Origin: Ascidiella aspersa
Lineage: Eukaryota
Assembly: GCA_963924565.1 (NCBI GenBank)
Contig: OZ004610.1
Coordinates: 6,634,001 to 6,698,000, forward strand
DNA: 64,000 bases
Reading direction: 5' to 3'
Below, one piece after another: positions 37,101 through 64,000 of the stretch. The notes beneath the pieces are model-generated. The model was not told the origin of the DNA. It did no database searches and was given only the letters and a program-made list of their open reading frames with translations. Made by a program: the position numbers and the translations under genes. Every line of letters begins with the position of its first letter. Positions within the stretch are counted from its first letter, which is position 1.

Positions 37101-40100
37101 CAATGCAAACACACTTATGAAAATTCGCCCTCCTAAAACCTATTTAACAAATTCGCAAATAATTCCTAGTATTGGCTCGAGCTCGAATATGATATTTTTG
37201 GCAAGATAATAATTACGGCTTGTAGCAACATAAGTACGCTAAGATGACGTCGTTTGGTATCGTTTCGGATCGCGATACTTTTTGTCCAAAATATCGTGTG
37301 TCGGTATCGGAACAAGATTTCAGGTATTGTACTCCCCTATGCGTAACATTATGATTTAAGTTATAAGAAATTTGGTCACGGAAATTGCCACATGATTTCG
37401 TATTTCTTTCGCTCGTGTAAAGTCCCTCTATAGGAATCTCTTGTCAAAAGGTTTTATATCTAGCATTGAAATCTGTTGTGTTGTTGTCAGTTAGCTTTTA
37501 ATTCAAGTAACTTTACTGGTTTCCTGAACATTTCCTAGAGAAGTGATGTCCGACGCATTGCGGTACGCCTAATGTTTTAAGTGCAGCCTAGTAACCATTT
37601 TCAATTCAATTAAAATACTTTTTTTACAATATCTTCCAACGTATAGAAAGCGCATATTACCCTGCAGCGAACTAGCATTGAAAAGTATTTAACGTCAGTT
37701 AATAGTTTTTCATGAGACTCTTCTCAAGTATATATGCCGCTTCTAAACAGCCACATTTCAATGTGCACCATGTTAAGCGTGAGATCTACATTATAGTTTC
37801 TACAATACTAAATAACATTCTAATTTTAGCCTTGCCTTGCTTGCACAATCTTTTTTTTTCTTTTTTCTTTTTTTGAACTTATTCGGTTGGCCTTCCTGAA
37901 GGTATTCATTTATGAGCGAAAAATTTTGTGAAAAAAGTTTTTCTGATAAATCAGCGCTTAAAGAACATGAAAAAATACACACTGGAGAAAAACAGTTTGC
38001 TTGCGAATATTGTGAAAAGGTTTTTCGTAGAAATGAACATGTTATGTCGCATGAAAGAATCCACACAAGATAAATGTATTCTCTTGCAAATATTGTTAAA
38101 AGAGTTTTAGTAGAAGTGATTGTGGCTGTGATAAATCGAAGTATGTATTGTACGTGTTGGTATACAACACATTTTGCCAAGATTCCAACTTGCATTATTG
38201 CACAAAACCTATTGTATCACAATAAACGCAAAGTTATAATATTCATTACAATAAAAACTTTGGGGAAAAATGTTTGCGCTGACTCCAGTTTTGACAAATC
38301 AATCCGTTACCAATGTAACTTTGTCCTGACCTCAATTAAAGTCAGCAGCTAAGTTTGTGTTTCTGTATTTTATTGTACTTTTGTCCTTGAAAATTATGTC
38401 ACCAACAAATATTTTTGGTTTCAAGCTAGTTTTGTTGTCACTGGCCACTTTCTCTGACACCAAAACTGCCGTATTAACAATTAAAATCTCACCCAAAACA
38501 AGGTAAAGCTAAGTTTAGCTATTATAAATTTGTGTGAAGTTAAGTTTTTGCTTCCGGGTTGCTTTTTAGGAGATTTCCTTGTATGCCGCTGGGTAAACTT
38601 CTGCTTTGAGTTTTATTTTTAACTTGGGTTCAAATCGTCAGAACATGACGTTATAAATTACATTTGGCGTCAATTAGGAGGTTCTAGCATATTTACGTAG
38701 CATTTAAGAAAAATACCACCACACTACACCGGCCTATATTTTATAAATATTAAAAAAGGTTACATTTAGCACGGATCTGTAATGTAGCGTGCTAATGAAT
38801 TGCAAAGCCAAAACGGTTGAGTGAATCGACATCATCTTGATTTGAGTTTGATTTGAGATTTGAGCTTGTATCATCTTCAGTTAATGTGACTGAGAAGTAA
38901 TTCAAGCATCACTTATCAAAGGCGAGCTACTCGACCTTTTTGGCTTTGTAATTCATTAGCAAGTTTAAAAAAAGAAAATAAAACAAAAATAATATATCAA
39001 ATTAACTATTTCAAATTGAAATCGCACGAAATTTTTACAGGTCACTAAGAAAATTAAAAAATACTTTAATATATAAAGAAAAAACAAACGTATTCAAGCC
39101 TGTTAGGTGATAAAGAAAAAAATGCCTTTGTTAGTTTAACCAAATCTTCGTATTCATTGTCTTTATATAAGGTTTTACAAGTCTAGGCGTTATAGTACTG
39201 CTATCGTGCTAAAGAGTGTGTTTGTTTTTCGCACCCACTTCTAGTTCAAAACACGTAAAGCAAAAAAGGTTCTTGGAGGTTTTTCTTTTTACAACTCTGC
39301 TCGCTGTTAATTAAATTCAGTATCAAGAAATTAAAGAGCAATTGATTCGATAAATGAGATCTAAGCTAGACTGGAATTGTGTTGTACTAGTATTTCAGTG
39401 ATACCTGTTATTTTAACTAATAGGAATCCACGATAAATGCGGGCTAGATCGTATTTTTTTACCAGGATTTTCGCATTGAAGATATCCACAAATACAATAA
39501 CCTACATTACGCCTATTTTTAGATGGCGTCAGAAAAAATTAAAGATAGCTAGTAGAATTTTCTTGTTTCATTCTTTAGTCAGTTAGACTGAAGCACTCCG
39601 GAAAAAATCGTTAAATTTTTACTTAAGTATAAATGCTACTATAGGTTATCGTCGATTTAAACTGGATGCCCATATTTGTTGCAACTAGTTAGCGTCGTTG
39701 GAAAAGTGTGGTCAAGGTCTACTTAGGGTTTCTCAACCGTGGCCCTCGGCCCCCTTGGGGGCCACGGGGCGGTCATTGGGGGGCCACTGGCATAACTCTG
39801 TATGTATAGGTATTACAAAACCAAAGCACCACTTCGTTCGTAATTTGCAAGTTTACTTAAATGTGTTATTTTAATTATGATTGTAAAACTTTCTTGTAAC
39901 GTTCGTAACAAATTTTTCTGACACGTTCTTTGACGCGTCTGTAGGCATGTTTAAAGTATAATATTGGATTCCTTCTATCACGAAAAGTTACGCTTATTCG
40001 AACGTTCGTCATTGGCAAGTTTGGATAAAGGCCGATCACTATGGCTAAACATTTACTTTGCAGCTTTATATGAAGTAGTGCGGAGCCAGCTTTTTTTCAT

Positions 40101-40424
40101 GCGGCCTGTTACTTTCTGATAACCTTCGCCTAATCATAAAGTGTGCGTCGAATGCTGTTGGACAAGCAACTAATGTGTAGCCCAGTGATCGGCAAACTGT
40201 GGGCCACAGAGTCATATTTGATGGGTCCAGAGTTACTTTTGAATTGCTTAGTGTTATTATGTTGTTGTGGGCCGTGCGGTAGCCCTACATTTGTTGCAAC
40301 GTATTTCAAAAGTTGGTGTGTCTAAGAATTTTTATATTGTCTCAGTGTGGTTTAGGCCCGCGTGCCAAATGTGTCTCTGAGAGTGCCGGTCAAGCTATAT
40401 TTTTTTCCAAGTTCTATGTGAACG

Positions 40425-40460
<36 letters not shown>

Positions 40461-43400
40461 TGTTTTCTTTGTTTTATGTTATCATTATGGCTTGCCGATG
40501 TTTTCGATATCAAGGCGCTTGTAAGTCGTGAGACTTATAACTGTACATTTCAATTTCTGTTAATTTATACTATAAATGATTTTTTCAAATCCTTTCATCT
40601 GCCATATGCGTCACGTATCCACTGTTTTCGTCGTGGTTTTATGTAGTGGGATTCTGCAAAGCGTATTTTAGGCCACGACAAAAATAATGTGCCGAACACT
40701 GGTGTAGAAAATTCGCAATTTTCTTGAAGGGCATTAATTTGCAAAAGTAACTCGTGAAATGCAAGTATGGTGCAGGGTTACTCAAAGTCAGTTTTAGACC
40801 ATTATTTAGCGAGGTTATGCACAGCGTATTTCTCGTAATAGTAACGCATTTATAAAACGAAAATTAAGAAATCATCTCGACGACAGTGACATTATTTTTT
40901 TTAATATTAAAAATTTGTTTATTTTGTCGTTTGGATACTAGAGTGGGATTTTGCATGTTGACTAACTTACAGTGTACAGTGTACACGCTATCGTTAACAG
41001 TCCTTACGATTTCCGAATGTTAGTGATCGTTAGTTGTTCGTTTTCGATAGAGTTTTCGTTTGCTCAAGGCAGTCCGTGCTGAATGAAGGCTAGTACAAAG
41101 TCGTTTCTGATATAGCTTGCGGCTAGCTTGTCTTTTCCCAACATAGCGTAACTAGTGACCGACTGACATTGGTTCTTATACAGTTTCGCTTTTATGTTTA
41201 GAAGGGTTGCTGAGCCATCCCACGTGAAGTTTTTAACACGTAAGGCCAAGGTCTATCTGCTCTTTGTTTTATGTTTTTTAATGTTCATAGCAGTGGAGCT
41301 CATAATGCTTCAAGTGCTACTTCGATGTTTGTACATAAATGAAAAACTAGAATAATCTGTCATGATTTTTATAAGCTGGTTTGACAATGTGTGTATCATT
41401 TATATAGTGTATCATCTATAAATCAGCATTTATATAACAGTTAATGACATTTGTTATGTTAGGATTACAAATTAAATTAAGATGACTTGTCTGTGATATC
41501 ACGCAACATTAAATACAATTTAAGGTAAAAGTATTATAAGTCTAATATGTGCAGTTGGCCACCGTCAGGCTCTACTTAAAACTGCAAAACGTTTTTTTAC
41601 ATAGACGTGACCTTTTTTTTCATATTTAAAGGTATAGTTCGGAAGCAAATTAGAAGTTACCTTTATTTAAAAAATTAAACAGTTGTGAGATACCAATTTT
41701 ATGGGTAATAAGTTTACCAAATTAAAATTATGTGATTTTAACTGAATGATAGTGGCCTGCATACCAATTTAACCGTAAAAGAAAAATATTTTTTAATAAA
41801 GTTGTGTTGCTTTTTTGTCTCTGCATTTTGTTTTATTGGTTCATGTTTTGTAATCATCTATCAATGTGTTTAATTTGTTATTTTAAATACTGGTTGTGCT
41901 ATTTATGAGTAAACATGTTTTTTTTAAACATATCTTATTTTTGATTTGGTTTGTTTAGTCTGAATATTATAATGGTTTTAGCGAATAATTTAAGTTTATA
42001 TAATTGTGCTTTTAACTTCAAAACAATTTGAAAACACTTGACAAGGTTCTTTCTTGCAAGCAATGCTTGTAAGCCCTTTCAAAGTCAATATTGATGCAAA
42101 ATTTGTCAACTTAACTGATTGACCCTGTATTTTAATATGAATTGAACTAAAAACAGAACTATGTTTGTGTTAAGGTGAAAGTAGGCATCTAGTTGCATAT
42201 ATAAATGGAGCCCATAAAAAAACAACACAATTGCAAATATTGTGAAAAGTGTTTTCGAGACCGTCATGCTCTTTCATGTCATGAAAGAACCCATACTGGA
42301 GAAAAGCCGTTCGCTTGTAAATACTGTTCAAAGTGTTTTAGTGACAAAGGATATGTCACCAAACATGAAAGAATACACACTGGAGAAAAACCATTCACCT
42401 GCAATTATTGTGAAAAGTCTTTTCGCACCAGTGGAATGCTTTTGTCTCATAAGAGAATTCATACTGAAGAAAAGAAATACACCTGCAGTTACTGTTCAAA
42501 GTGCTTTCGTAACAAAGGACACCTTACCAAGCACGAGCGATTACACACTGGAGAAAAACCCTACACTTGCAAATTTTGTGAAAAAACCTTTCCTCACAAA
42601 AGTTATCTCACCATACATGAACAAATACACATAGAAAATAAACCTCATACTTGTAAATATTGCGAAAAGTGCTTTCATACCAAACAAAGACTTACCAACC
42701 ATGAAAGGATTCACACTGGAGAAAAACCTTACAGCTGCCGTTACTGTTCCAAGTGTTTTCGAATAAAGGAAAAGCTTGGCGTCCATGAACGAATACATAC
42801 AGGGGAAAAGCCATACGCTTGTAAATTTTGCAAAAAGTCTTTTCGTCATACAGCAAGTCTCACAACACATGAAAGAATTCACACTGGAGATAAACCTTAC
42901 ACTTGTGATTATTGTGAAAAGAGTTTTAATGGCAGTGGAGATCTCAACAAACATAAACGAATCCACACTGGGGAAAAGCCGCATACTTGTAGTTATTGCT
43001 CAAAAAGTTTTAGGACAACAGGTAGTCTCGTCAACCATGAACGAACGCACACTGGAGAAAAACCTTTCACCTGCAATTATTGCGGAAAGTCTTTTTCTAA
43101 TACAAGCGCCCTCACCCAGCATGAGCGAATCCACACTGGAGAAAAACCTTTCACTTGTAAATATTGTTCCAAGTGTTTTGGTTTCAAAAACATTCTTATC
43201 AAACATGAAAGAATACATACCGGAGAGAAACCCTACACTTGCGATCATTGCAAAAAAAGTTTTACTACCAGTTGGGCATTTACAAGTCATAAAAAAACCC
43301 ATAGCGAAGAAAAACCTTACACTTGCGGTAATTGTTTCAAGTGTTTTCGTGAGAAAGGAAGCCTTACCAGCCATGAGCGAATACACACTGGAGAAAAACC

Positions 43401-46400
43401 TTTCACTTGCAAATATTGTGAAAAGAGTTTCCGTCATAAAAGCTCTCTTACTATTCATGAACGAATCCACACCGGAGAAAAACCTTACTCTTGCAAATTT
43501 TGTGAAAAAAGTTTTTCTGATAAATCAGCGCTTAAAGGACATGAAAAAATACACACTGGAGAAAAACAGTTTGCTTGCGAATATTGTGAAAAGGTTTTTC
43601 GTAGAAAAGAACATGTTAAGTCGCATGAAAGAATCCACACAAGATGAAAGTATTCTCTTGCAAATATTATTTAAAGAGTTTTAGTAAAAGTGATTATGGC
43701 TGTGATAAAATGAAATATGTATTGTATATGCTAGTATGGAACACTTTTTTGTTTCTCATTTGCATTATTGGACAAAACCTATTGTATCACAATAAACGCA
43801 AAGTTATAATATTAATTAAAATAAAAACTTGGGTGAAAACTGTTTGCGCTGATGTGATGAAAATAAGTTAGAGAGCGATACTCCAGTTTTGACAAATCAA
43901 TCCGTTACCAATGTAACTTTGTCCTGACCTCAATAAAAGTCAGCAGCTAAGTTTGTGTGTCTATATTTTATTGTGCTTTTGTCCTTAAAAATTATGTCAC
44001 CCACAAATATTTTTGTTTTCAAACTAGTTTTATCGCACTTGCCACTTTCTCTGACACCAAAGCTGCCGTTTTAACAATAAAAATCTCACCCAAAACAAGG
44101 TAAAGCTAAGTTTAGCTATTATAATTTGTGTGAAGTTCAGCAAGTTTTTGCTTCCGGGTTGCTTTTTAGGAGATTTTCTTGTATGCCGCTGGAGTTTTAT
44201 TTTTAACTGAACTTCAAGTCGTCAGAACGTGACTTCAGTTCCAAATTACATTTGATGTCAATTAGGAGGTTCTAGACCAGGGGGCAACCAACGACCAGCG
44301 GGAAGGAATTGACCCGCGACCTCGTTTTCGAACTAGGTATCAGGCAATGCACTAATTTTAATTTTTTTGGCTTTATACAGCCAAAAGAGTTTTTCGAACT
44401 TTACGCGAATCTTATTTGACTTATCGCTTTTTGGGGGGAATCGTTTCTTCATGTAAAAAGGTTATTACTTTGCGGATTTTATATATAACATTACATCGAA
44501 ATTATATCAGCGCCATTTCAATAAACACAAACACGTACTTAAACCTAAGTCATTTAAGTTCAAGTCAAGTCATTTGTCCAATGGTCTTAAGACAATGACT
44601 AAAGTGCACCAAAGTCATTGTAACACTGGTATGCAACGCAACACGCATTATGAAAACTGCTAAGCTAAAATGGATTGCAAAGAGAACACGCAGTGTCAAG
44701 AAAACTGGAGGTTAGGTTAGGAAAGCCAAACTAAATGATATCCCCAGTGACAACATAGTACGCTGATTAGCTTTTCTGCTGCAAGACTGCCCCCAAGCGG
44801 CAGGCGCCGATCCAGGATTTTTGTTTTGGGAGACCATGAGTATTTTTAGTAGATGACGTCACAAGTTACATTTAAACGTTAAGTCTTATGTAAGTAGCCT
44901 TGAGAACATCACACAGTTCGTATTTAGGTTGACGGGAAACGAATCCATCTACGTAATGTACCTTTTGTATACTTACATAACATAAGGTACATTACGTAGA
45001 TGTGTTCGTTTCGCGCAAATAAAAAATGTATATCGGAGACTACTTAGCTGCTTAGATTCACCGACCAAGGACTGGTTAACAAGAAAATCTCATCCAACAA
45101 TGTTAACGGCAAAATAAACTTTTTCAGGTAACATTTAAACAAAATTACCACTACACTACACCGGCCTATATTTTATAAATATTAAAAAAGGTTACAGTAA
45201 GCACGGATCTGTAATGTAGAGTGCTAATAAATTGCAAAGCCAAAACGGTTGAGTGAATCGACATCATCTTGATTATTAAGACGTTTCGATTTGAGCTTGT
45301 ATCATCTTCAGTTAATGTGACTGAGAAGTAATTCAAGCATCACTTATCAAAGGCGAGCTACTCGACCTTTTTGGCTTTGTAATTCATTAGCAAGTTTAAA
45401 AAAAGAAAATAAAACAAAAATAATATTTCAAATTAACCATTTCAAATTGAAATCGCACGAAATTTTTTACAGGTCACTAAGAAAATTAAAAAATACTTTA
45501 ATATATAAAGAAAAGACAAACGTATTCAAGCCTGTTAGGTGATAAAGAAAAAAATGCCTTTGTTATTTTAACCAAATCTTCGTATTCATTGTCTTTATAT
45601 AAGGTTTTACAAGTCTAGGCGTTATAGTACTGTTATCGTGCTAAAGAGTGTGTTTGTTTTTCGCACTCACTTCTAGTTCAAAACACGTAAAGCAAAAAAG
45701 GTTCTTGGAGGTTTTTCTTTTTACAACTCTGCTCGCTGTTAATTAAATTCAGTATCAAGAAATTAAAGAGCAATTGATTCGATAAATGAGATCTAAGCTA
45801 GACTGGAATTGTGTTGTACTAGTATTTCAGTGATACCTGTTATTTTAACTAATAGGAATCCACGATAAATGCGGGCTAGATCGTATTTTTTTTACCAGGA
45901 TTTTCGCATTGAAGATATCCACAAATACAATAACCTACATTACGCCTATTTTTAGATGGCGTCAGAAAAAATTAAAGATAGCTAGTAGAATTTTCGTGTT
46001 TCATTCTTTAGTCAGTTAGACTGAAGCGCTACGGAAAAAATCGTTAAATTTTTACAAGTATAAATACTACTATGGGTTATCGTCGATTTAAACTGGATGC
46101 CCATATTTGTTGCAACTAGTTAGCGTCGTTGGAAAACTGTGGTCTCGGCCCCCTTGGGGGCCACGGAGCGGTCATTGGGGGGGCCACTGGCATAACTCTG
46201 TAAGTATAGGTTTTACAAAACCAAAGCACCACTTCGTTCGTAATTTGCAAGTTTACTTAAATGTGTTATTTTAATTATGATTGTAAAACTTTCTTGTAAC
46301 GTTCGTAACAAATTTTTCTGACACGTTCTTTGACGCGTCTGTAGGCATGTTTAAAGTATAATATTGGATTCCTTCTATCACGAAAAGTTACGCTTATTCG

Positions 46401-49400
46401 AACGTTCGTCATTGGCAAGTTTGGATAAAGGCCGATCACTATGGCTAAACATTTACTTTGCAGCTTTATATGAAGTAGTGCGGAGCCAGCTTTTTTTCAT
46501 GCGGCCTGTTACTTTCTGATAACCTTCGCCTAATCATAAAGTGTGCGTCGAATGTTGTTGGACAAGCAACTAATGTGTAGCCCAGTGATCGGCAAACTGT
46601 GGGCCACAGAGTCATATTTGATGGGTCCAGAGTTACTGTTGAATTGCTTAGTGTTATTATGTTGTTGTGGGTCGTGTGATAGCCCTACATTTGTTGCAAC
46701 GTATTTCAAAAGTTGGTGTGTCTAAGAATTTTTATATTGTCTCAGTGTGGTTTAGGCCCGCGTGCCAAATGTGTCTCTGAGAGTGCCGGTCAAGCTATAT
46801 TTTTTTCCAAGTTCTATGTGAACGCAAAAATTTTGTCGCGCTTCGCGCGTTACCTGTTTTCTTTGTTTATGTTATCATTATGGCTTGCCGATGTTTTCGA
46901 TATCAAGGCGCTTGTAAGTCGTGAGACTTATAACTGTACATTTCAACTTCTGTTAATTTATACTATAAATGATTTTTTCGAATCATTTCATCTGCCATAT
47001 GCGTTACGTATCCACTGTTTTCGTAGTGGTTTTATGTAGTGGGATTCTGCAAAGCGTATTTTAGGCCACCACAAAAATAATGTGCCGAACACTGGTGTAG
47101 AAAATTCGCAATTTTCTTGAAGGGCATTAATTTGCAAAAGTAACTCGTGAAATGCAAGTATGGTGCAGAGTTACTCAAAGTCAGTTTAAGGCCATTATTT
47201 AGCGAGGTTATGCACAGCGTATTTCTCGTAATAGTAACGCATTTATAAAACGAAAATTAAGAAATCATCTCGACGACAGTGACAGTATTTTTTTTTAATA
47301 TTAAAAATTTGTTTATTTTGTCGTTTGGATACTAGAGTGGGATTTTGCATGTTGACTAACTTACAGTGTTCAGTGTACACGCTATCGTTAACAGTCCTTA
47401 CGATTTCCGAATGTTAGTGATCGTTAGTGGTTCGTTTTCGATAAGGGTTATCGTTAAGAGTTTACGATAGAGTTTTCGTTCGCTCAAGGCAGTCCGTGCT
47501 GAATGAAGGCTAGTACAAAGTCGTTTCTGATATAGCTTGCGGCTAGCTTGTCTTTTCCCAACAGAGCGTAACTAGTGACCGACTGACATTGGTTCTTATA
47601 CAGTTTCGCTTTTATGTTTAGAAGGGTTGCTGAACCATCCCACGTGAAGTTTTTAACACGTAAGGCCAAGGTCTATCTGCTCTTTGTTTTATGTTTTTTA
47701 ATGTTCATAGCAGTGGAGCTCATAATGCTTCAAATGCTACTTCGATGTTTGTACATAAATGAAAAACTAGAATAATCTGTCATGATTTTTATAAGCTGGT
47801 TTGACAATGTGTGTATCATTTATATAGTGTATCATCTATAAATCAGCATGTATATAACAGTTAATGACATTTGTTATGTTAGTATTACCAATTAAATTAA
47901 GATGACTTGTCTGTGATATCACGCAACATCAAATACAATTTAAGGTAAAAGTATTATAAGTCTTAAATGTGCAGTTGGCCACCGTCAGGCTCTACTTAAA
48001 ACTGCAAAACGTTTTTTTACATAGACGTGACCTTTTGTTTAATATTTAAAGGTATAGTTCGGAAGCAAATTAGAAGTTACCTTTATTAAAAAATTAAACA
48101 GTTGTGAGATATCAATTTTATGGGTAATAAGTTTACCAAATTAAAATTATGTGATTTTAACTGAATGATAGTGGCCTGCATACCAATTTAACCGTAAAAG
48201 AAAAATATTTTTTAATAAAGTTGTGTTGCTTTTTTGTCTCTGCATTTTGTTTTATTGGTTCATGTTTTGTAATCATCTATCAATGTGTTTAATTTGTTAT
48301 TTTAAATACTGGTTGTGCTATTTATGAGTAAACATGTTTTTTTTAAACATATCTTATTTTTGATTTGGTTTGTTTAGTCTGAATATTATAATGGTTTTAG
48401 CGAATAATTTAAGTTTATATAATTGTGCTTTTAACTTCAAAACAATTTGAAAACACTTGACAAGGTTCTTTCTTGCAAGCAATGCTTGTAAGCCCTTTCA
48501 AAGTCATTATTGATGCAAAATTTGTCAACTTAACTGATTGACCCTGTATTTTAACATGAATTGAACTAAAAACAGAACTATGTTTGTGTTAAGGTGAAAG
48601 TAGGCATCTAGTTGCATATATAAATGGAGCCCATAAAAAAACAACACAATTGCAAATATTGTGAAAAGTGTTTTCGAGACCGTCATGCTCTTTCATGTCA
48701 TGAAAGAACCCATACTGGAGAAAAGCCGTTCCCTTGTAAATACTGTTCAAAGTGTTTTAGTAAAAAAGGATCTGTCACTGAACATGAAAGAATACACACT
48801 GGAGAAAAACCATTCACCTGCAATTATTGTGAAAAGTCTTTTCGCACCAGTGGAATGCTTTTGTCCCATAAGAGAATTCATACTGAAGAAAAGAAATACA
48901 CCTGCAGTTACTGTTCAAAGTGCTTTCGTGACAAAGGATACCTTATCAAGCACGAGCGATTACACACTGGAGAAAAACCCTACACGTGCAAATTTTGTGA
49001 AAAAACCTTTCCTCACAAAAGTTATCTCACCAAACATGAAAGAATTCACACTGGAGATAAACCTTACACTTGTGATTACTGTGAAAAGAGTTTTAATGAC
49101 AGTGGGGATCTTAACAAACATAAACGAATCCACACTGGGGAAAAGCCACATACTTGTAGTTATTGCTCAAAAAGTTTTAGGACAACAGGTAGTCTCGTCA
49201 AACATAAACGAATCCACACTGGGGAAAAGCCACATACTTGTAGTTATTGCTCAAAAAGTTTTAGTACCACAGGAAACCTTGTCACTCATGAACAAACGCA
49301 CACTGGAGAAAAACCTTTTGCCTGCATTTATTGCAAAAAATATTTTCGTCAGAAAAGGGTTCTTGTCATGCATGAGCGAATCCACACTGGAGAAAAACCT

Positions 49401-52400
49401 TTCACTTGTAAATATTGTTCCAAGTGTTTTCGTTCCAAAACCAATCTTATCAAACATGAAAGAATACATACCGGAGAGAAACCCTACACTTGCGATCATT
49501 GCAAAAAAAGTTTTACTACCAGTTGGGCATTTACAAGTCATAAAAAAACCCATAGCGAAGAAAAACCTTACACTTGCAGTTATTGTTTCAAGTGTTTTCG
49601 TCAAAAGGGAAACCTTACCAACCATGAGCGAATACATACTGGAGAAAAACCTTTCACTTGCAAATATTGTGAAAAGAGTTTCCGTCATAAAATCTCTTTT
49701 ACTATTCATGAACGAATCCACACTGGAGAAAAACCTTACTCTTGCAAATTTTGTGAAAAAAAGTTTTCCAGTAACTCAGCGCTTAAACAACATGAAAAAA
49801 TACACACTGGAGAAAAACGTTTTGCTTGCAAATATTGTGAAAAGGTTTTTCGTAGAAGTGGCCATGTTAAATCGCATGAAAGAATCCACACCAGATAAAC
49901 TTCTCTCTTGCAAATATTGTTAAAATAGCTATAGGACAAGTGATTATGGCTATGATTAATCAAAATAAATATGTATTGCATATATTAGTATTGCACAATA
50001 GTTTGTAGTCAAGATTACAATTTGCATTATTATACAAAACCTATTGTATCACAATAACCGCCAACCATATATTATTCCTTACAATAAAAAATTTGGTGAA
50101 AACTGTTTTCTGCAGATGTGTTGAAGATTTGTTAGAGAACGATAGTTTACCGCTAACCAAATAAACAGCCTTTTTTGCTGTTTGGCTTGTTTAGGTTTGC
50201 AAACAAATTTAATAGTTTTTTTGTTATGGTCTGCGAGACCTTGCTGCGTTTGGTTCTGGCCCGCGGCCGGGAATACAGTGGGTGTCACGAACACAAATAA
50301 AATTCCTGCTATATCAGGTTGTACTTCGCTTTTCATTCAGGTTCTATTCAGAAGTGTTAACATAAAGTTTACATTTGAGTTGGTTTTATTTTAAGTTTTA
50401 CACGGGCACATGTTTTCCCTTGCAACTTTTCATGTTGAATGACCTACCTTATCTGCGTTTTTTTAAGAAATCAGAGCTACGTAATGTTTTTGAAACACAT
50501 GTACTGGGATGATTGTTTCAAAATTTTTGGGTTTAGTTTGAATTAAAGGTATAATTTTGATGCTTTAGTGCTACTAGACTTTGTTCGTATCTAAGCTTAG
50601 ATCGTCATTGCGATTGTCTTAAATAAATAACAATTCTCCGATTGAGTATAAATAAATATGTGTGCGTTTTGAAAGTTTAGACGTAGTCCGATATTATTAG
50701 GCTTGAACATCATTTACTTAAAGTGCATACGTCGTTTACTATAAATTACTTAACCCAGCCCTATTTGATACAAAGCATCGATAAGCCATTATAAGAGATT
50801 ATTCAAAACTTCAGCAGTTCGACATTTTTTAAACCATGAAAAAAACGTAAATTTTATTATTAATAAAATTACGAATAAAAAACTGAATGAAACGAAGTAT
50901 AAAACGACCATTTATATTTGTGTATCGGCATATTTTCTATTTTTAAAGCCGAATATCCCTCAGAAGTTCACACAGAAAGGTAACAATACCAAAAAGTGAA
51001 ACATAGTCGGGGCTTTTTCGTCATATTTACAATGATAGATGACATTGACATACCTTGCACGTAAAAGGACATAATTCACGAATGTTTAGCATGTTTCATC
51101 TTTGTGCACTCCGAAAAGCAACTACTGGGGGACAAACTACTCAATATTCGTGGTTTTATACTTCCAGTATAAACACGTCGGGACCTAGATAAAACAAGTG
51201 GTATACGGGTTCCGCTGCGATTTTGCAGAAAGCTCGATTCTGTTTTTATCAAACGAATGAAGGATTTATTCGTTACAATTGGGCCAAAGTTAAATTAAGC
51301 CAAAAGTTTCCGTTTGTTTTCGGATGTTAATTTGCACAGGTTACGCTAAATACTTTCCCATAGCAGACGTGCACACCCGCAACTTAAGGTCCATTCCGAT
51401 TCAGCTCTATAGGTGGTAAGAGAATTGTTGTTTGGATTTGCTCGTAAACCGGTTTGGTGGGGTTGTACTATAGAGAATAAATACTTTCAATATTTCGGTT
51501 CAAGACGATCGCGGCGTTGTTGTGCTACCGTAACGGCTTTCTTTATTTCGGTCATATATTTTGAAATCATATTCGTTTAGTAAGTAACATATAACCAAAG
51601 CCGCTGTGCGTTCTATATTCGGGTAAATATAATTACTATTCTGTCTTTAAGAGAATCAATTATTTCAAATTTACTAATCAAAACATATTGTGTTATATGT
51701 ATAAATGATCACTATTAATTATCACCAAACCAGAGGTTTCCATCGCTCTTCGGCATTACATGGCCACAGAACCTTTGTAGTAAGTCTTTTTGTGGTACAA
51801 ACTTCGAACTATTTACTCAGACCCAGCACTTCTACACTAAATTGTAACAAAAAATACGTTGGAACTAAATCCGTGAGAATTGTACTCCAATCACTGTATC
51901 TTCAAAAATCTTCTTCGAATATGTTATGGTGCCATTCTTTTTACTAAAAGAATATAACGTGGCCTTTTGTCACGAACACAAACAATGTGCCCTCTATTTT
52001 GGCACTACTTCGACGCTTTCCAGTCTAGATATCCAGAAATGCTTTCAGGAAATTAACTTTCAGTGAGCTTCTGAAGCACATAAAAGCACACGAGTTTTCA
52101 CTGCCACGTTTAATATAGAATGACCTGCTTTAACACACTAACACAGACAACACAGTAAACATCACGCCACGTTTAGGGCATTATGACGTAACACGAACGC
52201 CTATAGTCAAAGCAAAACAACAAGTTTAACGCCTAAGGAAAGAATGTTACATACAATCGTTAGAAACTAATTTGTGACACTTCTATATTATTTAATCACC
52301 TTTAACGGACTCCATCGCTCTTCGACAGTACCTGGCCTCGATTGAGAAGTCGTTGTGTGAACCGAGCGTCGACCACGGCACCCTCGACCCTTCCTCTGTG

Positions 52401-53439
52401 CGCACCTGCTTTAACCAGCTCATGAACGGCGTCGACAAGAACCTACACACAAAGACTCGCGACAGGTTGGTAGGGAAAACTGTGCGCCCTTGTGTTTGTC
52501 TTTGCCCACGGAAACGTAATTTTTTTGTTTCTGAATTTTTAAGCTATATTCAACTCTTAACAATATAAGAAATTTTGTGATAATACAGGAAATAAAAAAA
52601 ATCGGTAGCCACTTAAACAGACATTACAACCCAAAAATCGAAATATTTAATGCTTGTTTTTTTGTATAAGTTGCGAAACGCTAGTTTCTAAATACAAGCA
52701 AATTAAATATTGCCGTATCGATATTTTATCCTGCCAAGGCGCTAACTTATTTACAAGCGTTGTTTTTTTAGTTCTCACTGGTTCGTAAACGCCGGTCGAC
52801 GATAACATTTTAACGCCCCGTTTATATTTGATGAAACTCTAAATTCAAATTCTTACAAACTTGCAAAAAATTACAAGCTTTAATGATGTATTACTGTAAA
52901 AGGTTAATTTAATCTATAAAATTTAGCAAATTTAAAAGTGAATTTGGCCGCCCACCCAGAAAGGTTTAGTTGTGGCACCTCGATCTCGTATATTTGTCTT
53001 AAAGTGTCTAAAATGTAGACTAATCTTTTCAAATTAACTACAGTGACCCCGTAAAATAATATACTCCTATCCCATTTAGTGCTGTATAATGTAATGTGTT
53101 TTAATAAATGTATCCTAATGACTTGCCTAGTTGTTTAAAAAATATTTCCTTCCAAATTCGGGTTAGTAAAATAATTTTTGTATTTCTACCATTCCGCAAG
53201 TCTCAAAGGGTTAAAAACCACTGGTCCAAAAAAAATCCTGGCCTGACACAAAATGGCGCCCGATTAACTCTGCCTTCGCGTCGCCACCGTTTAGATTCAC
53301 GCAGAACCTTTCCATCTTCCGCCGCGACATTCTCGAACTGATGAAGTCGGAGACATCGACGAGCACCGCCCCCGCCGCCACACCGGGGGCCAACGTCATC
53401 GACCTGTCGGCGGGCAACTCCAACAACATGATGACGTAG
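13102..53439 (+). CDS. XPO7: Exportin-7 / RanBP16-RanBP17 family. 25 exons: 13102-13110, 13964-14110, 14968-15061, 15488-15654, 16035-16244, 16616-16791, 17591-17735, 20380-20577, 21531-21752, 23153-23243, 24114-24249, 25314-25422, 26030-26103, 26988-27132, 27928-28030, 28412-28508, 30570-30680, 31584-31665, 32285-32393, 33570-33784, 34341-34479, 35275-35495, 36620-36718, 52329-52465, 53295-53439 (TAG)
   Basis: Continuous in-frame splicing. Recognisable XPO7 peptides: [136 protein letters not shown], and a C-terminal NNMMT*. The 9-nt first exon (MEQ) is the least certain. Confidence 0.95.
17163..17608 (+). repeat. ~77-bp degenerate minisatellite (about 6 units) running into the XPO7 exon-7 acceptor
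   Basis: Repeats of AGAGT(G/A)TACCA(A)TTTTT..AGATAA..TTTTT(GC)CAGTCTTCC.ATTT.ACT. Confidence 0.85.
17881..18185. mobile_element. hAT-type MITE
   Basis: CAGTGTTTCTTAACC / GGTTGAGAAACGCTG; perfect TSD GTATAGAT. Confidence 0.88.
18626..18673 (+). ncRNA. Minimal hammerhead ribozyme motif (PLE 3'-end fragment)
   Basis: TTTACC-CTGAAGA-A-GGCGATTTG(CA)TAGGTTGCC-GAAAC-GTT-GGTTAA. Stem II pairs with G-U wobbles. Confidence 0.7.
19311..19425 (+). repeat. ~22-bp tandem repeat (AATTTAGTAGTTTGGAATTGCA), about 5 copies
   Basis: Directly visible periodicity. Confidence 0.85.
20808..20848 (-). ncRNA. Minimal hammerhead ribozyme motif within fold-back element ~20731-20915
   Basis: Minus strand: AA-CTGAAGA-T-GATAC(AAGCTC)GTATC-GAAAC-GTC-TT. 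A degenerate inverted copy CTGACGATGATA.. lies at 20862. Confidence 0.65.
21767..22743. mobile_element. hAT-type non-autonomous element hosting the 21901-22101 insertion
   Basis: CAGGGGTCAGCAA / TCGGTGACCGCTG termini, subterminal CCGGCCC motifs, degenerate TSD. Confidence 0.65.
21901..22101. mobile_element. Fold-back insertion (~60-bp near-perfect inverted arms) with a 12-bp flanking direct repeat and a half hammerhead; PLE-like
   Basis: Arms ~21908-21970 and 22007-22069. TAATACAGTTCT at 21901 and 22090. The minus strand reads GCCGAAACGTT...AATAAA. Confidence 0.65.
24761..25259. mobile_element. hAT-type MITE with nested Merlin-like MITE (24841-25052)
   Basis: Outer termini CAGTGGTTCCTAA / TTGGGAACCACTG. 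Inner element GGCGCTGGTCT...AGACCAGCGTC with perfect TSD AGAAAAAC. Confidence 0.85.
26533..26838. mobile_element. hAT-type MITE
   Basis: TIR CAGGGATGTCCAAC / GTTGGACATCCCTG; perfect TSD TATTAGAC; GGGCCGC subterminal repeats. Confidence 0.92.
28608..28860 (+). repeat. Unclassified dispersed repeat (also ~10900-11142; related ATAAGAC motifs at 60760-60900)
   Basis: Shared TTTTGGACTCCA, ATAAGAC, AAATAGCCAGAA and CACTAACTCCC...ATTTCAACCCTA blocks. Confidence 0.6.
29002..30367. mobile_element. hAT-type non-autonomous element (~1.37 kb); inverted deletion derivative at 3632-3780
   Basis: CAGTGTTTCTTAAA / TTTAAGAAGCACTG; TSD CCATAGAG/TCATAGAG. 30250-30367 is the reverse complement of 3632-3750. 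Confidence 0.8.
30681..31583 (+). other. U12-type (minor spliceosome) GT-AG intron of XPO7
   Basis: The 5' site GTATCCTT matches the U12 consensus. A branch-like TTCCTTTAC lies about 15 nt before CAG (31581-31583). A phase-2 join gives ..LFQLV/YPTFID.. Confidence 0.85.
30768..31034. mobile_element. hAT-type MITE inside the U12 intron
   Basis: CAGTGGTTCTCAACC / GGTTGAGAATCACT; GGGTGCC subterminal motifs. Confidence 0.75.
32522..32860. mobile_element. hAT-type MITE (related inverted fragment at ~20130-20353)
   Basis: CAGGGGTTCTTAAACT / AGTTTAAAAACCCCTG; TSD TGTTAAGG/TGTTAGGG. Confidence 0.85.
36780..37339. mobile_element. hAT (Ac-like TAGGGATG terminus) non-autonomous element
   Basis: TAGGGATG.. 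/ ..CTCCCCTA; CCGATA/TATCGG subterminal repeats; TSD TGGGTAAC/TGCGTAAC. Confidence 0.75.
37921..38073 (+). pseudogene. 5'-truncated third copy of the nested ZNF gene (last ~1.8 fingers plus stop, followed by the 3' flank)
   Basis: [16 protein letters not shown]...[25 protein letters not shown]. The segment 37921-38687 matches 43495-44275. Confidence 0.85.
40183..40701. mobile_element. hAT-type MITE, duplicated with the ZNF unit (second copy 46583-47094)
   Basis: CAGTGATCGGCA / TGCCGAACACTG; flanks GTGTAGCC/GTGTAGAA. Confidence 0.75.
42205..43647 (+). CDS. C2H2 zinc-finger protein, 17 tandem fingers, 480 aa, single coding exon, nested in XPO7 intron 23
   Basis: ORF of 28-aa CxxC..F..L..HxxxH repeats with TGEKP linkers. 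An in-frame TAA lies immediately before the ATG. Confidence 0.92.
   Translation: MEPIKKQHNCKYCEKCFRDRHALSCHERTHTGEKPFACKYCSKCFSDKGYVTKHERIHTGEKPFTCNYCEKSFRTSGMLLSHKRIHTEEKKYTCSYCSKCFRNKGHLTKHERLHTGEKPYTCKFCEKTFPHKSYLTIHEQIHIENKPHTCKYCEKCFHTKQRLTNHERIHTGEKPYSCRYCSKCFRIKEKLGVHERIHTGEKPYACKFCKKSFRHTASLTTHERIHTGDKPYTCDYCEKSFNGSGDLNKHKRIHTGEKPHTCSYCSKSFRTTGSLVNHERTHTGEKPFTCNYCGKSFSNTSALTQHERIHTGEKPFTCKYCSKCFGFKNILIKHERIHTGEKPYTCDHCKKSFTTSWAFTSHKKTHSEEKPYTCGNCFKCFREKGSLTSHERIHTGEKPFTCKYCEKSFRHKSSLTIHERIHTGEKPYSCKFCEKSFSDKSALKGHEKIHTGEKQFACEYCEKVFRRKEHVKSHERIHTR
45275..45316 (-). ncRNA. Minimal hammerhead ribozyme motif within fold-back element ~45201-45393 (same family as 20731-20915, 16869-16924 and 38770-38963)
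   Basis: Minus strand: ATTAA-CTGAAGA-T-GAT...ATC-GAAAC-GTC-TTAAT, with a perfect 5-bp stem I and a GUC cleavage triplet. Confidence 0.7.
48624..49898 (+). CDS. C2H2 zinc-finger protein, 15 tandem fingers, 424 aa; recent paralog of 42205-43647, nested in XPO7 intron 23
   Basis: Same N-terminus ([13 protein letters not shown]), near-identical upstream DNA, TGEKP-linked fingers. Confidence 0.92.
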   Translation: MEPIKKQHNCKYCEKCFRDRHALSCHERTHTGEKPFPCKYCSKCFSKKGSVTEHERIHTGEKPFTCNYCEKSFRTSGMLLSHKRIHTEEKKYTCSYCSKCFRDKGYLIKHERLHTGEKPYTCKFCEKTFPHKSYLTKHERIHTGDKPYTCDYCEKSFNDSGDLNKHKRIHTGEKPHTCSYCSKSFRTTGSLVKHKRIHTGEKPHTCSYCSKSFSTTGNLVTHEQTHTGEKPFACIYCKKYFRQKRVLVMHERIHTGEKPFTCKYCSKCFRSKTNLIKHERIHTGEKPYTCDHCKKSFTTSWAFTSHKKTHSEEKPYTCSYCFKCFRQKGNLTNHERIHTGEKPFTCKYCEKSFRHKISFTIHERIHTGEKPYSCKFCEKKFSSNSALKQHEKIHTGEKRFACKYCEKVFRRSGHVKSHERIHTR

Positions 53440-56719: not shown

Positions 56720-56925
56720 CTAAAGCGTTTTCGTGAGCAAGGGCATAGTATCTCACCAAACGTGAACGAACAAACACAGAAAAAAAAAATTTCACTTGTA
56801 GATGCTGTTCAAGGTGTTTTCATTGCAAAGGACATATTAGGCCTACTAAACATGTAAGAAAACACACGGGAGAAAAACCCTATACACTAGCAAGTTTTGC
56901 GAACTATCTTTTCAGAGCAAAGACC
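56720..56925 (+). pseudogene. Degenerate C2H2 zinc-finger relic (~2-3 frameshifted fingers)
   Basis: agtatctcaccaaacgtgaacgaaca...ttcacttgtagatgctgttcaaggtgttttc...aaacatgtaagaaaacacacgggagaaaaaccctataca, i.e. FTCRCCSRCF and [13 protein letters not shown]. It resembles the nested ZNF family. Confidence 0.7.
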
Positions 56926-56967
56926 GGTAAATTGTGAATGGCAGTAATATTATACGCCACGTAATGG

Positions 56968-58709: not shown

Positions 58710-59567
58710 ATGGAGAAGGGGTCATCAACTAAAAAACAAGACTCTATCAGCCCCTTTAGTTATGACAAGAAGCCTGAACCACCAAAGGCCTTACCTAACC
58801 AAGACAACGAAAAAGAGTTCAGATGTGGTATTTGTGAGAAGTGCTTTAAAACTAGAAAGACTCTTACAAACCACATTTCTCAAGTACACAGTAAAAAGCA
58901 TAGTTGCAAAGAGTGTCCAAAATCATTTGGACTCCTGAGTTTGCTAGAAAGACATGTTCGCCTTCACTCTGGTGAAAGACCATTTCCATGTAAGGATTGT
59001 GGAAAGTCTTATGTAACAGCTGGTCGACTGAACAGACACATGAAAACACACACTGGAAAGAATTTGTGTCGATGCAGCATATGTGAAAAATCATTTACAT
59101 GTGCGACCTATTTAAAAAAACACATTGATTTGGTGCATCACAAACTTAAGTCTTTTAAATGCGAACATTGTGACAAGTGTTTTGGCGATGCTGGGTCTGT
59201 CACTGCCCACCTAAGAACCCACACCGGTGAAAAACCATTCAGTTGCAAATATTGTGGAAAGTGTTTTGCTGGTAGAGGAAATCTCCATACACATGAACGG
59301 ACTCATGCTGGAGAAAAACCTCACGTCTGCAAGTTTTGTGGCAAGTGCTTTGGTCTTGCAGGGTCACTAACTGTCCACCAGAAAATTCACACAGGGGAAA
59401 AGCCGCATATTTGCGAAATCTGTGGCCAGGGTTTTGGAAGAAAAGGAAATCTTTTATCTCACATGAAAATTCACACTGGAGAAAAGCCATACCAGTGTTC
59501 AATTTGCCAAAAGAAATTCACTGTAAAAAGTAGTTTAAAATCTCATATATCTCATATTCATAAATAA
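58710..59567 (+). CDS. C2H2 zinc-finger protein, 9 fingers, short low-complexity N-terminus
   Basis: ORF 58704-59567, first ATG at 58710. Nine CxxC/HxxxH or HxxxxH fingers with TGEKP-type linkers. More divergent than the nested pair. Confidence 0.9.
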   Translation: MEKGSSTKKQDSISPFSYDKKPEPPKALPNQDNEKEFRCGICEKCFKTRKTLTNHISQVHSKKHSCKECPKSFGLLSLLERHVRLHSGERPFPCKDCGKSYVTAGRLNRHMKTHTGKNLCRCSICEKSFTCATYLKKHIDLVHHKLKSFKCEHCDKCFGDAGSVTAHLRTHTGEKPFSCKYCGKCFAGRGNLHTHERTHAGEKPHVCKFCGKCFGLAGSLTVHQKIHTGEKPHICEICGQGFGRKGNLLSHMKIHTGEKPYQCSICQKKFTVKSSLKSHISHIHK

Positions 59568-63993: not shown

Positions 63994-64000
63994 GTAAGTT

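What the first reader, a model, noticed from the sequence alone, without database searches (positions are those of the whole stretch)
42205..49898. Young zinc-finger paralogs whose differences fall on DNA-contacting residues (arms-race signature)
Seen: several kb of non-coding flank differ only by scattered substitutions, yet matched fingers differ repeatedly at helix positions -1/+2/+3/+6. Finger 2: [10 protein letters not shown]>[10 protein letters not shown] (-1,+3,+6). Finger 4: [10 protein letters not shown]>[10 protein letters not shown]. Finger 12/10: [10 protein letters not shown]>[10 protein letters not shown]. Finger 14/12: [10 protein letters not shown]>[10 protein letters not shown] (-1,+3,+6). 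Finger 16/14: [10 protein letters not shown]>[10 protein letters not shown]. The stub copy carries a third state ([15 protein letters not shown]). Linkers and Cys/His scaffolds are almost unchanged. Established: this pattern typifies PRDM9 and TE-repressing KRAB-ZNFs. Inference: a fast-evolving sequence-recognition system, possibly directed against transposons, in an invertebrate whose introns are full of MITEs.
Basis: partly seen in the sequence, partly recalled or inferred. Interest (0 to 1): 0.8.

Follow-up and report, generated by a model that had tools for sequence, protein, structure and literature searches.

The report
Tandem zinc-finger genes diverging at DNA-reading residues
Two neighbouring many-fingered zinc-finger genes and a leftover fragment in a sea-squirt genome differ mainly at the residues that read DNA bases, a pattern already known from vertebrate, fish and insect zinc-finger families, so this is a new example rather than a new kind of system.

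Summary
Gene A (42205-43647, 17 C2H2 fingers), gene B (48624-49898, 15 fingers) and a 3' stub (37921-38073) form a same-strand tandem cluster. Every quoted finger difference is present, and all Cys/His ligands are intact.

Over 13 matched fingers, NG86 gives dN/dS 1.56 at positions -1/+2/+3/+6 and 0.25 elsewhere. A pairwise ML codon model gives 2.04 versus 0.25 (equal rates rejected, p=1e-9; contact rate = 1 rejected only at p=0.04).

"Young paralogs" is only half right. The 3.4-kb 5' flank and fingers 1-4 differ by about 2%. The 3' fingers have dS 0.14, and the 3' flanks differ by 21% and then stop aligning. The array also lost three fingers and gained one through in-register recombination.

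I found no donor for the variant helices in the genome. The same signature appears in eight independent paralog pairs elsewhere in this genome.

A and B have no effector domain, so they are neither KRAB-ZNF nor PRDM9 members.

Verdict: a real selection-type signature in a new member of a known kind. The scan had already noted this same stretch (s1-806536). It also noted a similar hypervariability reading on other DNA of this assembly (s1-805283), which I did not check.

The parts
37921..38073 (+). Stub of a third gene copy: the end of finger 16, finger 17 and a TAA stop. There is no homology to A or B upstream of 37921.
   Evidence: It differs from gene A's 3' end at 3 of 150 nt. All three differences are nonsynonymous and lie in helix positions.
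38074..38687 (+). 3' flank of the stub (F'), homologous to gene A's 3' flank. It carries AATAAA signals about 150-180 nt after the stop.
   Evidence: Mismatch with F1 is 13% in the proximal part and 6.4% in the distal part.
38697..42204 (+). Upstream region U1 of gene A. It is non-coding and 97.9% identical to U2. It contains a ~1.16-kb dispersed repeat at 39725-40883.
42205..43647 (+). Gene A: a single ORF of 480 aa with 17 C2H2 fingers, a 7-residue N-terminus, a TGA stop, and a TAA codon directly before the ATG.
43648..44275 (+). 3' flank of gene A (F1).
44276..45120 (.). An ~845-bp insertion in the A-B spacer that is absent from the stub-A spacer. It holds MITE-like pieces and a 36-nt inverted repeat. 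It marks the left edge of the high-identity tract.
45128..48623 (+). Upstream region U2 of gene B, the partner of U1.
48624..49898 (+). Gene B: a single ORF of 424 aa with 15 C2H2 fingers. B5 is A5 head joined to A8 tail. B7 is A10 head joined to A9 tail. B8 pairs with A10, and B9 pairs with A11 but carries a replaced helix.
49899..50150 (+). 3' flank of gene B (F2). It is alignable to F1 and F' for only about 250 bp, with 20-21% mismatch, and includes AATAAA signals. The repeat array ends here.

Best explanation
A and B are real tandem paralogs, with a truncated third copy. They are single-exon genes made only of zinc fingers and lie on the + strand downstream of the Pfam-verified exons of the genome's only XPO7-like gene, probably inside one of its last introns.

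The cluster evolves in three ways:
1. Non-allelic recombination within and between units. This removed three fingers and added one, in register, and recently homogenised about 3.9 kb (the upstream region plus fingers 1-4).
2. Strong purifying selection on the zinc-binding scaffold and linkers.
3. Amino-acid replacement at or above the neutral rate at the base-contacting helix positions.

The two proteins therefore most likely bind different DNA sequences. The divergence of specificity is selection-driven, either as positive selection for new targets or as selection keeping the two specificities apart against gene conversion.

Shown here: the anatomy, the mosaic ages, the rate contrast, and the absence of donors. 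Inferred: that the proteins are expressed and bind DNA. The nature of the targets, whether transposons or anything else, is unknown.
For: - Structure and coordinates.
- Scaffold constraint: non-contact dN/dS is 0.25 (p=1e-5 against synonymous sites). All 128 zinc ligands are intact. About 6% of random point changes would create a stop, yet both ORFs are open at dS 0.14.
- Contact sites: NG86 dN/dS is 1.56. ML gives omega 2.04, with LRT p=0.042 against omega=1 and p=1e-9 against omega equal to the scaffold's.
- In the ~2% tract, 8 of 10 nucleotide differences lie in helix codons (binomial p=2.6e-4). Contact replacements exceed the flank rate (Fisher p=2e-4).
- The helices of A2, B2, A11 and B9 have no match with 3 or fewer mismatches in 30 nt anywhere in the 308-Mb assembly. 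No other finger in the window or in 27 other loci is closer than the orthologous finger.
- Recombinant fingers: B5 tail versus A8 tail, 0 differences; B7 is A10 head (1 difference) joined to A9 tail (1 difference).
- The same signature appears in eight independent paralog pairs of other ZNF loci in this genome: pS 0.092, pN contact 0.135, pN elsewhere 0.031, Fisher p=0.004. Entropy peaks at -1, +3 and +6.
- Published precedent for this signature in metazoan ZNFs: PMC10547256.
Against: - Omega above 1 rests on about 21 contact replacements in one gene pair and is only nominally significant.
- The flank-based test assumes that the flank and the fingers share one history, and patchy gene conversion could break that assumption.
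- There is no outgroup. No protein above 55% identity exists in a 5.8-billion-sequence database, and B itself is not on record. Changes therefore cannot be polarised.
- There is no evidence of transcription.
- No effector domain is present, so how binding would translate into a function is unknown.
- Copy number was not checked with reads.
Confidence: 0.6

Rival explanations
1. Relaxed constraint only. The contact residues are simply unconstrained (omega about 1) after duplication, while the fold is kept. Nothing adaptive is happening and there is no arms race.
For: - In the older 3' part, contact Nd against Sd is not significantly above 1 (Fisher p=0.20).
- The ML test against omega=1 gives only p=0.042.
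- Contact positions are the least constrained positions of any C2H2 finger, as the entropy profile shows.
Against: - In the ~2% tract, contact replacements occur at about 7 times the flank rate (p=2e-4).
- Five of the 18 differing contact codons carry two nucleotide changes.
- Two helix codons, +6 of finger 16 and +1 of finger 17, show three states across the stub, A and B.
- Pooled independent pairs in the family give pN contact above pS (p=0.004).
Confidence: 0.25
2. Assembly artefact. Part of the two units is one locus seen as two haplotypes and joined in tandem. The 2% difference between U1 and U2 is within the heterozygosity range that I recall for sea squirts.
For: - U1/U2 divergence is 2.1%, and no read-depth check was possible.
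- The heterozygosity range is from my own knowledge, not from a tool.
Against: - The window has no N gap.
- The units differ in finger number. Their 3' coding halves have dS 0.14, and their 3' flanks are 21% different and then unrelated.
- The gene-end to flank to upstream-region junction occurs twice with different sequence and an 845-bp insertion.
- A third, truncated copy precedes U1.
- No alternative-haplotype contig of this region exists in the assembly.
Confidence: 0.07
3. The helix differences were imported by short gene conversions from other fingers or from distant paralogs, without selection on A or B themselves.
For: - Gene conversion and unequal recombination clearly act here.
- Differences are clustered within helices, and several codons have two changes.
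Against: - The four helix 30-mers searched genome-wide (A2, B2, A11, B9) each have no second match with 3 or fewer mismatches in the genome.
- All other fingers are 6-14 differences away, against 1-6 for the ortholog.
- The nearest other ZNF loci are only 65-69% identical in DNA over long alignments.
Confidence: 0.05
4. A and B are unexpressed relics that lost the family's N-terminal leader. The pattern was inherited from functional ancestors, and the ORFs are open only because the loss was recent.
For: - A and B lack the acidic leader that nearly all other poly-ZNF genes sampled in this genome carry.
- No RNA evidence exists.
- B is absent from public protein sets.
Against: - Scaffold omega of 0.25 over dS 0.14 applies to the A-B comparison itself.
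- Both ORFs are intact, all ligands are present, and AATAAA signals are conserved in all three copies.
- The leaderless start (MEPIKKQ, preceded by a stop) is shared by both genes, so the loss predates their divergence.
Confidence: 0.1

Closest known systems
KRAB zinc-finger genes of tetrapods (tandem clusters, contact-residue positive selection, TE repression through TRIM28)
   Same: - Tandem cluster.
- Long arrays of canonical C2H2 fingers with TGEKP linkers.
- Finger gain and loss by in-register recombination.
- Replacements concentrated at -1/+2/+3/+6 over a conserved scaffold.
   Different: - No KRAB domain and no room for one. Only 7 residues precede finger 1, and there are stops in all frames upstream.
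- Single-exon genes.
- TE binding and repression are untested.
- The host is a tunicate.
FiNZ-ZNFs of cyprinid fish and other lineage-specific metazoan poly-ZNF expansions (Wells et al. 2023, PMC10547256)
   Same: A lineage-specific family of recently duplicated paralogs in which base-contacting residues are the most variable positions and show dN/dS above 1.
   Different: - A and B lack any N-terminal family domain.
- The family here is small (two genes and a stub), with no close relatives elsewhere in the genome.
- There are no expression or knock-down data.
PRDM9
   Same: Rapid change at the DNA-contact residues of a C2H2 array.
   Different: - No PR/SET, KRAB-like or SSXRD domains.
- Fingers within an array are only 49-81% identical in DNA, so the array is not a minisatellite evolving by concerted turnover.
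This genome's own leader-bearing poly-ZNF family (clusters on contig C1)
   Same: - Single-ORF poly-C2H2 genes in tandem clusters with the same contact-site signature.
- About 65-69% DNA identity to A over long alignments.
   Different: Those genes carry a conserved acidic N-terminal leader of 60-100 residues and an H-x4-H first finger. A and B have neither.

Membership tests
C2H2 poly-zinc-finger proteins (Pfam PF00096 / PF13465) | Tandem C-x2-C-x12-H-x3-H fingers joined by TGEKP-type linkers | tested here: met
   Pfam E-values of 1e-64 to 1e-119. A has 17 canonical fingers and B has 15, with all ligands present.
KRAB-ZNF | N-terminal KRAB domain (PF01352) | tested here: not met
   No KRAB hit. 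Only 7 residues precede finger 1. A TAA codon directly precedes the ATG, and all three frames upstream contain stops.
KRAB-ZNF | Binding and silencing of transposable elements | not testable with these tools
   No motif prediction, ChIP data or expression data were available.
PRDM9 | PR/SET methyltransferase domain upstream of the finger array | tested here: not met
   Pfam finds only zinc-finger families.
PRDM9 | Minisatellite-like array of near-identical finger repeats | tested here: not met
   Within-array finger DNA identity is 49-81%.
ZAD-ZNF (insects) | N-terminal ZAD domain (PF07776) | tested here: not met
   No hit, and there is no N-terminal region to hold one.
Leader-bearing poly-ZNF family of this genome | Conserved acidic N-terminal leader (motif DDGFSDDS.ATITDWSS) within the same ORF | tested here: not met
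   The full leader is present in 20 of 27 other sampled arrays, and a weaker form of it in 2 more. It is absent from A and B in all frames upstream.
ZNFs under positive selection at contact residues (signature of Emerson & Thomas 2009, as cited in PMC10547256) | dN/dS above 1 at -1/+2/+3/+6 with purifying selection elsewhere | tested here: met
   NG86 gives 1.56 against 0.25. ML gives 2.04 against 0.25, with p=0.042 for omega=1 and p=1e-9 for equality. The young tract against the flank gives p=2e-4. This is one gene pair, so support is marginal.
Gene nested in an XPO7 intron | XPO7 exons on the same strand on both sides of the cluster | tested here: inconclusive
   Pfam TPR_XPO7 exons lie at window 21636-27132 on the + strand and are the only such gene in the genome. 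The candidate last exons at 52296-52565 and 53215-53436 (+) had no Pfam hit, and the first had no PDB hit. I assigned them only from my recollection of the XPO7 C-terminus.

The most novel reading that the evidence does not exclude
Sea squirts run their own fast-evolving zinc-finger recognition system, independent of KRAB, ZAD and FiNZ. It would comprise a large family with a lineage-specific acidic leader that has no database homolog, together with leaderless derivatives such as A and B. A and B sit on the same strand as an essential host gene and probably inside one of its introns. They are driven to new DNA specificities by positive selection, possibly against the MITEs and other repeats that fill this genome's introns.
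Probability: 0.2. Interest if true: 0.55.

Novelty: new member of a known kind. Interest (0 to 1): 0.3.

Why it matters
If it holds, the contact-residue diversification known from vertebrate, fish and insect zinc-finger families extends to tunicates, the sister group of vertebrates. It would do so in genes that have no recognisable effector domain. That raises the question of how a protein made only of fingers would act: by occupancy alone, by competing with leader-bearing relatives, or through an unknown partner.

The locus is also a compact example of how recombination reshapes a finger array while selection works on single helix residues. It shows finger loss, finger gain and a conversion tract. 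It does not reveal a new principle.

Tried and rejected
Steps that could not be completed:
I worked beside them, using gene B and other parts of gene A.
- The protein-atlas search could not read new sequence.

Searches that came back empty:
- Relatives to polarise the changes. The word search with B returned only generic poly-ZNFs at 55% identity or less, and B is not in the collection.
- XPO7 identity of the flanking exons. IBN_N (PF03810) has no match near the window. PDB holds no similar chain. Only the TPR_XPO7 domain confirmed the upstream exons.
- Homologs of the family leader. There is no Pfam hit. Only two weak matches (E 1.8e-6 and 1.1e-4) appeared among 1.8 billion representatives; the one inspected is an unrelated repetitive protein.

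Ideas considered and rejected:
- A single unequal crossover (X-hybrid-Y) as the whole history. It predicts equal divergence for the stub flank and for U, but these are 8.8% and 2.1%.
- The ZNF unit as a mobile element. There are no other copies in the genome.
- A fusion with XPO7 by splicing. An in-frame TAA directly precedes the ATG.

Full report
**What is there**

The window is G000:C4:6634001-6698000 of a 308.6-Mb assembly in 75 contigs. Earlier notes of this scan call the organism a sea squirt; I did not verify that. Run names were coded, and a marine metagenome holds a small share of the region's words.

On the + strand lie:
- Gene A, 42205-43647, 480 aa, 17 canonical C2H2 fingers.
- Gene B, 48624-49898, 424 aa, 15 fingers.
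- A stub, 37921-38073, holding the end of finger 16, finger 17 and a stop.

Pfam finds only zinc-finger families. Each ORF has 7 residues (MEPIKKQ) before finger 1 and two residues (TR) after the last zinc-binding His. A TAA codon directly precedes the ATG, and all three upstream frames are full of stops. The products are therefore proteins made only of fingers. AATAAA signals 66-185 nt after the stop occur in all three copies.

**Repeat anatomy**

Self-comparison gives this order:

stub - F' (38074-38687) - U1 (38697-42204) - A - F1 (43648-44275) - an 845-bp insertion (44276-45120) - U2 (45128-48623) - B - F2 (about 250 bp). Beyond F2 the sequence is unrelated.

U contains a 1.16-kb dispersed repeat with at least 40 copies in the genome. 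The insertion holds MITE-like pieces and a 36-nt inverted repeat. The 580 bp before the stub are unique in the genome. No other copy of A or B exists. The next best loci are 65-69% identical in DNA over long alignments and are generic members of large ZNF clusters, mainly on contig C1.

**The units are a mosaic, not uniformly young**

| Comparison | Divergence |
|---|---|
| U1 vs U2 | 73 of 3441 aligned sites (2.1%; about 1.5% without two small clusters) |
| Fingers 1-4, A vs B | 10 of 357 nt |
| From finger 5 onward, A vs B | Identity falls to 72-95% per 200-nt block |
| Fingers A9-17 vs B6-15 | dS 0.137 |
| F1 vs F2 | 21% mismatch, then no alignment |
| Stub vs A, coding | 2% |
| F' vs F1 | 13% proximal, 6.4% distal |

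There is thus an older tandem family (roughly 9-20% diverged) on which a recent tract of about 3.9 kb has been homogenised. That tract runs from the right edge of the 845-bp insertion to about finger 5. A single unequal crossover does not fit, because it predicts equal divergence for F'/F1 and U1/U2.

**Finger-level events**

By DNA identity, A1-5 pair with B1-5, A9 with B6, A10 with B7, and A12-17 with B10-15.
- B5 is A5 head (2 differences) joined to A8 tail (0 differences). This is an in-register loss of three fingers in B, or a gain in A.
- B7 is A10 head (1 difference) joined to A9 tail (1 difference), followed by B8 with the A10 tail. This is an in-register one-finger duplication.
- A11 and B9 are positional partners. 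Outside the helix pS is 0.17. Inside the helix (-2 to +6), 7 of 8 residues differ and pN is 0.60.

**Test of the observation**

Over 13 matched fingers (361 codons), NG86 gives:

| Partition | Nd / N | Sd / S | dN/dS |
|---|---|---|---|
| Contact (-1, +2, +3, +6) | 21.5 / 125.5 | 3.5 / 30.5 | 1.56 |
| All other codons | 20.5 / 755.3 | 17.5 / 171.7 | 0.25 |

The ratio is about the same in the young part (1.60) and the older part (1.57).

Fisher tests:
- Contact versus non-contact replacements: p=2e-9.
- Non-contact replacements versus synonymous changes: p=1e-5, showing purifying selection.
- Contact replacements versus all synonymous changes: p=0.048.

I also wrote a pairwise GY94-type ML model with shared kappa and separate times for the young and old parts. 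It gives omega 2.04 at contact sites and 0.25 elsewhere. The likelihood-ratio test rejects equality at p=1e-9 and rejects omega=1 at contact sites at p=0.042.

In the young tract, the non-coding flank serves as a neutral yardstick:
- 8 of 10 nucleotide differences lie in the 84 helix nucleotides out of 357 (binomial p=2.6e-4).
- Contact-codon replacements number 6 in about 39 sites, against 73 in 3441 flank sites (odds ratio 8.4, p=2e-4).

All 128 zinc ligands are intact. Linkers change only where fingers recombined, plus one Q>R.

The stub adds three differences from A. All three are nonsynonymous and in helix positions. At +6 of finger 16 and at +1 of finger 17, the three copies show three states linked by single steps.

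**Rivals tested**

*Gene conversion from other fingers or paralogs.* For nine variant helix pairs, the orthologous finger is the nearest sequence (1-6 differences in 30 nt). All other fingers of A and B are 6-14 differences away. None of 27 other ZNF loci comes within 6. Genome-wide pattern searches for the helices of A2, B2, B9 and A11, allowing 3 mismatches in 30, found only the query itself.

*Haplotype misassembly.* This could not be tested with reads. Against it:
- The window has no N.
- The two genes differ in finger number.
- The 3' halves and 3' flanks are far more diverged than the heterozygosity I recall for sea squirts, which is my own knowledge, not a tool result.
- The flank-to-upstream junction occurs twice in different versions.
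- There is a third, truncated copy.

The 2% difference between U1 and U2 is within sea-squirt heterozygosity as I recall it, so I keep a small probability for this rival.

*Old differences shielded from conversion.* If fingers 2 and 4 were unconverted old patches, about 5 synonymous differences would be expected at dS 0.137, and 1 is seen. This count is my own arithmetic. That reading still requires selection on the contact residues.

**Family context**

Twenty-seven other poly-ZNF arrays were fetched. Nearly all are intact single ORFs.

Of 36 informative paralog pairs, 31 have contact pN/pS above 1. The usual range is about 1.3-2.9, against 0.2-0.75 for the rest of the finger.

Eight non-overlapping pairs pooled give pS 0.092, pN contact 0.135 and pN elsewhere 0.031 (contact versus synonymous p=0.004). 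Positional entropy over 304 fingers peaks at -1, +3 and +6.

The signature is therefore a property of this genome's poly-ZNF genes in general, not of A and B alone.

Most of those genes carry a conserved acidic N-terminal leader that A and B lack. That leader has no Pfam match and no convincing homolog among 1.8 billion representative proteins.

**Host-gene context**

Pfam TPR_XPO7 matches four + strand exons at window 21636-27132. These are the only such matches in the genome. Further exportin-like ORFs continue on the + strand to about 36.7 kb. ORFs at 52296-52565 and 53215-53436 (+) look to me like the last XPO7 exons, but that rests on my recollection. They had no Pfam hit, and the first had no PDB hit.

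This is not proven.

**Comparison with what is known**

Contact-residue diversification over a conserved scaffold in tandemly duplicated poly-ZNF genes is established for tetrapod KRAB-ZNFs. It was shown for zebrafish FiNZ-ZNFs, and entropy profiles suggest it in several other animals (PMC10547256). C2H2 gene numbers are known to vary most among transcription-factor families in tunicates (PMC8122590). That paper does not analyse contact-site evolution.

A and B work like these families in evolutionary pattern. They fail the membership tests for KRAB-ZNF, PRDM9, ZAD-ZNF and the genome's own leader family, because they have no domain other than fingers.

**Most likely mechanism**

- Shown: tandem paralogs reshaped by in-register recombination and gene conversion, with strong constraint on the fold and replacement at or above the neutral rate at the base-reading positions.
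- Inferred: both are expressed DNA-binding proteins whose specificities have been driven or kept apart by selection.
- Speculative: the targets are transposons. Expression could come from their own promoters or from the host pre-mRNA. There are AG sites after a pyrimidine-rich run 15-30 nt before the ATG, which could serve spliced-leader trans-splicing, a process I know of in tunicates (my own knowledge).

**Limits**

- No outgroup exists in the searched collections.

**Verdict**

This is a new member of a known kind and of moderate to low interest. The leaderless architecture and the lineage-specific leader family are the more unusual side points.

Noticed in passing
Loci L004-L029 (G000:C1 0.64-2.70 Mb and 5.28-5.37 Mb; also C6:24.47 Mb and C4:1.25-1.31 Mb): The genome's large poly-ZNF family consists of single-ORF genes. 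Each has a conserved acidic N-terminal leader of 60-100 residues (motif ...ESDDGFSDDSVATITDWSSQEHQPVSE...) followed by an H-x4-H first finger. The leader has no Pfam match. Among 1.8 billion representative proteins it gives only two weak matches; the one inspected is an unrelated repetitive protein. It may be a lineage-specific ZNF-associated domain.
   Followed up: partly
window 39725-40883 and its partner in U2: A ~1.16-kb dispersed repeat with at least 40 copies at 73-91% identity across the chromosomes. It lies inside the duplicated upstream region of both genes, so it was inserted before the homogenisation.
   Followed up: partly
window 44276-45120: An 845-bp insertion present only in the A-B spacer. 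It has a 36-nt inverted repeat at 44933-45015 and short pieces repeated genome-wide (MITE-like). Its right end coincides with the left edge of the 98%-identity tract.
   Followed up: partly
window 58710-59564 (+): A third, unrelated 9-finger ZNF ORF downstream of the presumed XPO7 end. Its first finger is of the H-x4-H type typical of the C1 family, but it has no acidic leader.
   Followed up: no
window 56749-56934 (+): An isolated degenerate finger-like ORF (…CRCCSRCFHCKGHIRPTKHVRKHTGEKPY…). It may be a relic of another ZNF copy.
   Followed up: no
window 13922-36775 and 52296-53436 (+): The genome's only XPO7-like gene. Its TPR_XPO7 exons at 21636-27132 are verified by Pfam. The intron that would hold the ZNF cluster is about 15.6 kb, much longer than the others, and contains same-strand AATAAA signals of the nested genes.
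   Followed up: partly
window 43645-43647, 38071-38073, 49896-49898: The three copies use different stop codons: A has TGA, while the stub and B have TAA.
   Followed up: no
window 61955-63999 (+): ORFs that look like exons of a formylglycine-generating-enzyme or sulfatase-modifying-factor type gene (…[15 protein letters not shown]…). I recognised them from memory only and did not test them.
   Followed up: no
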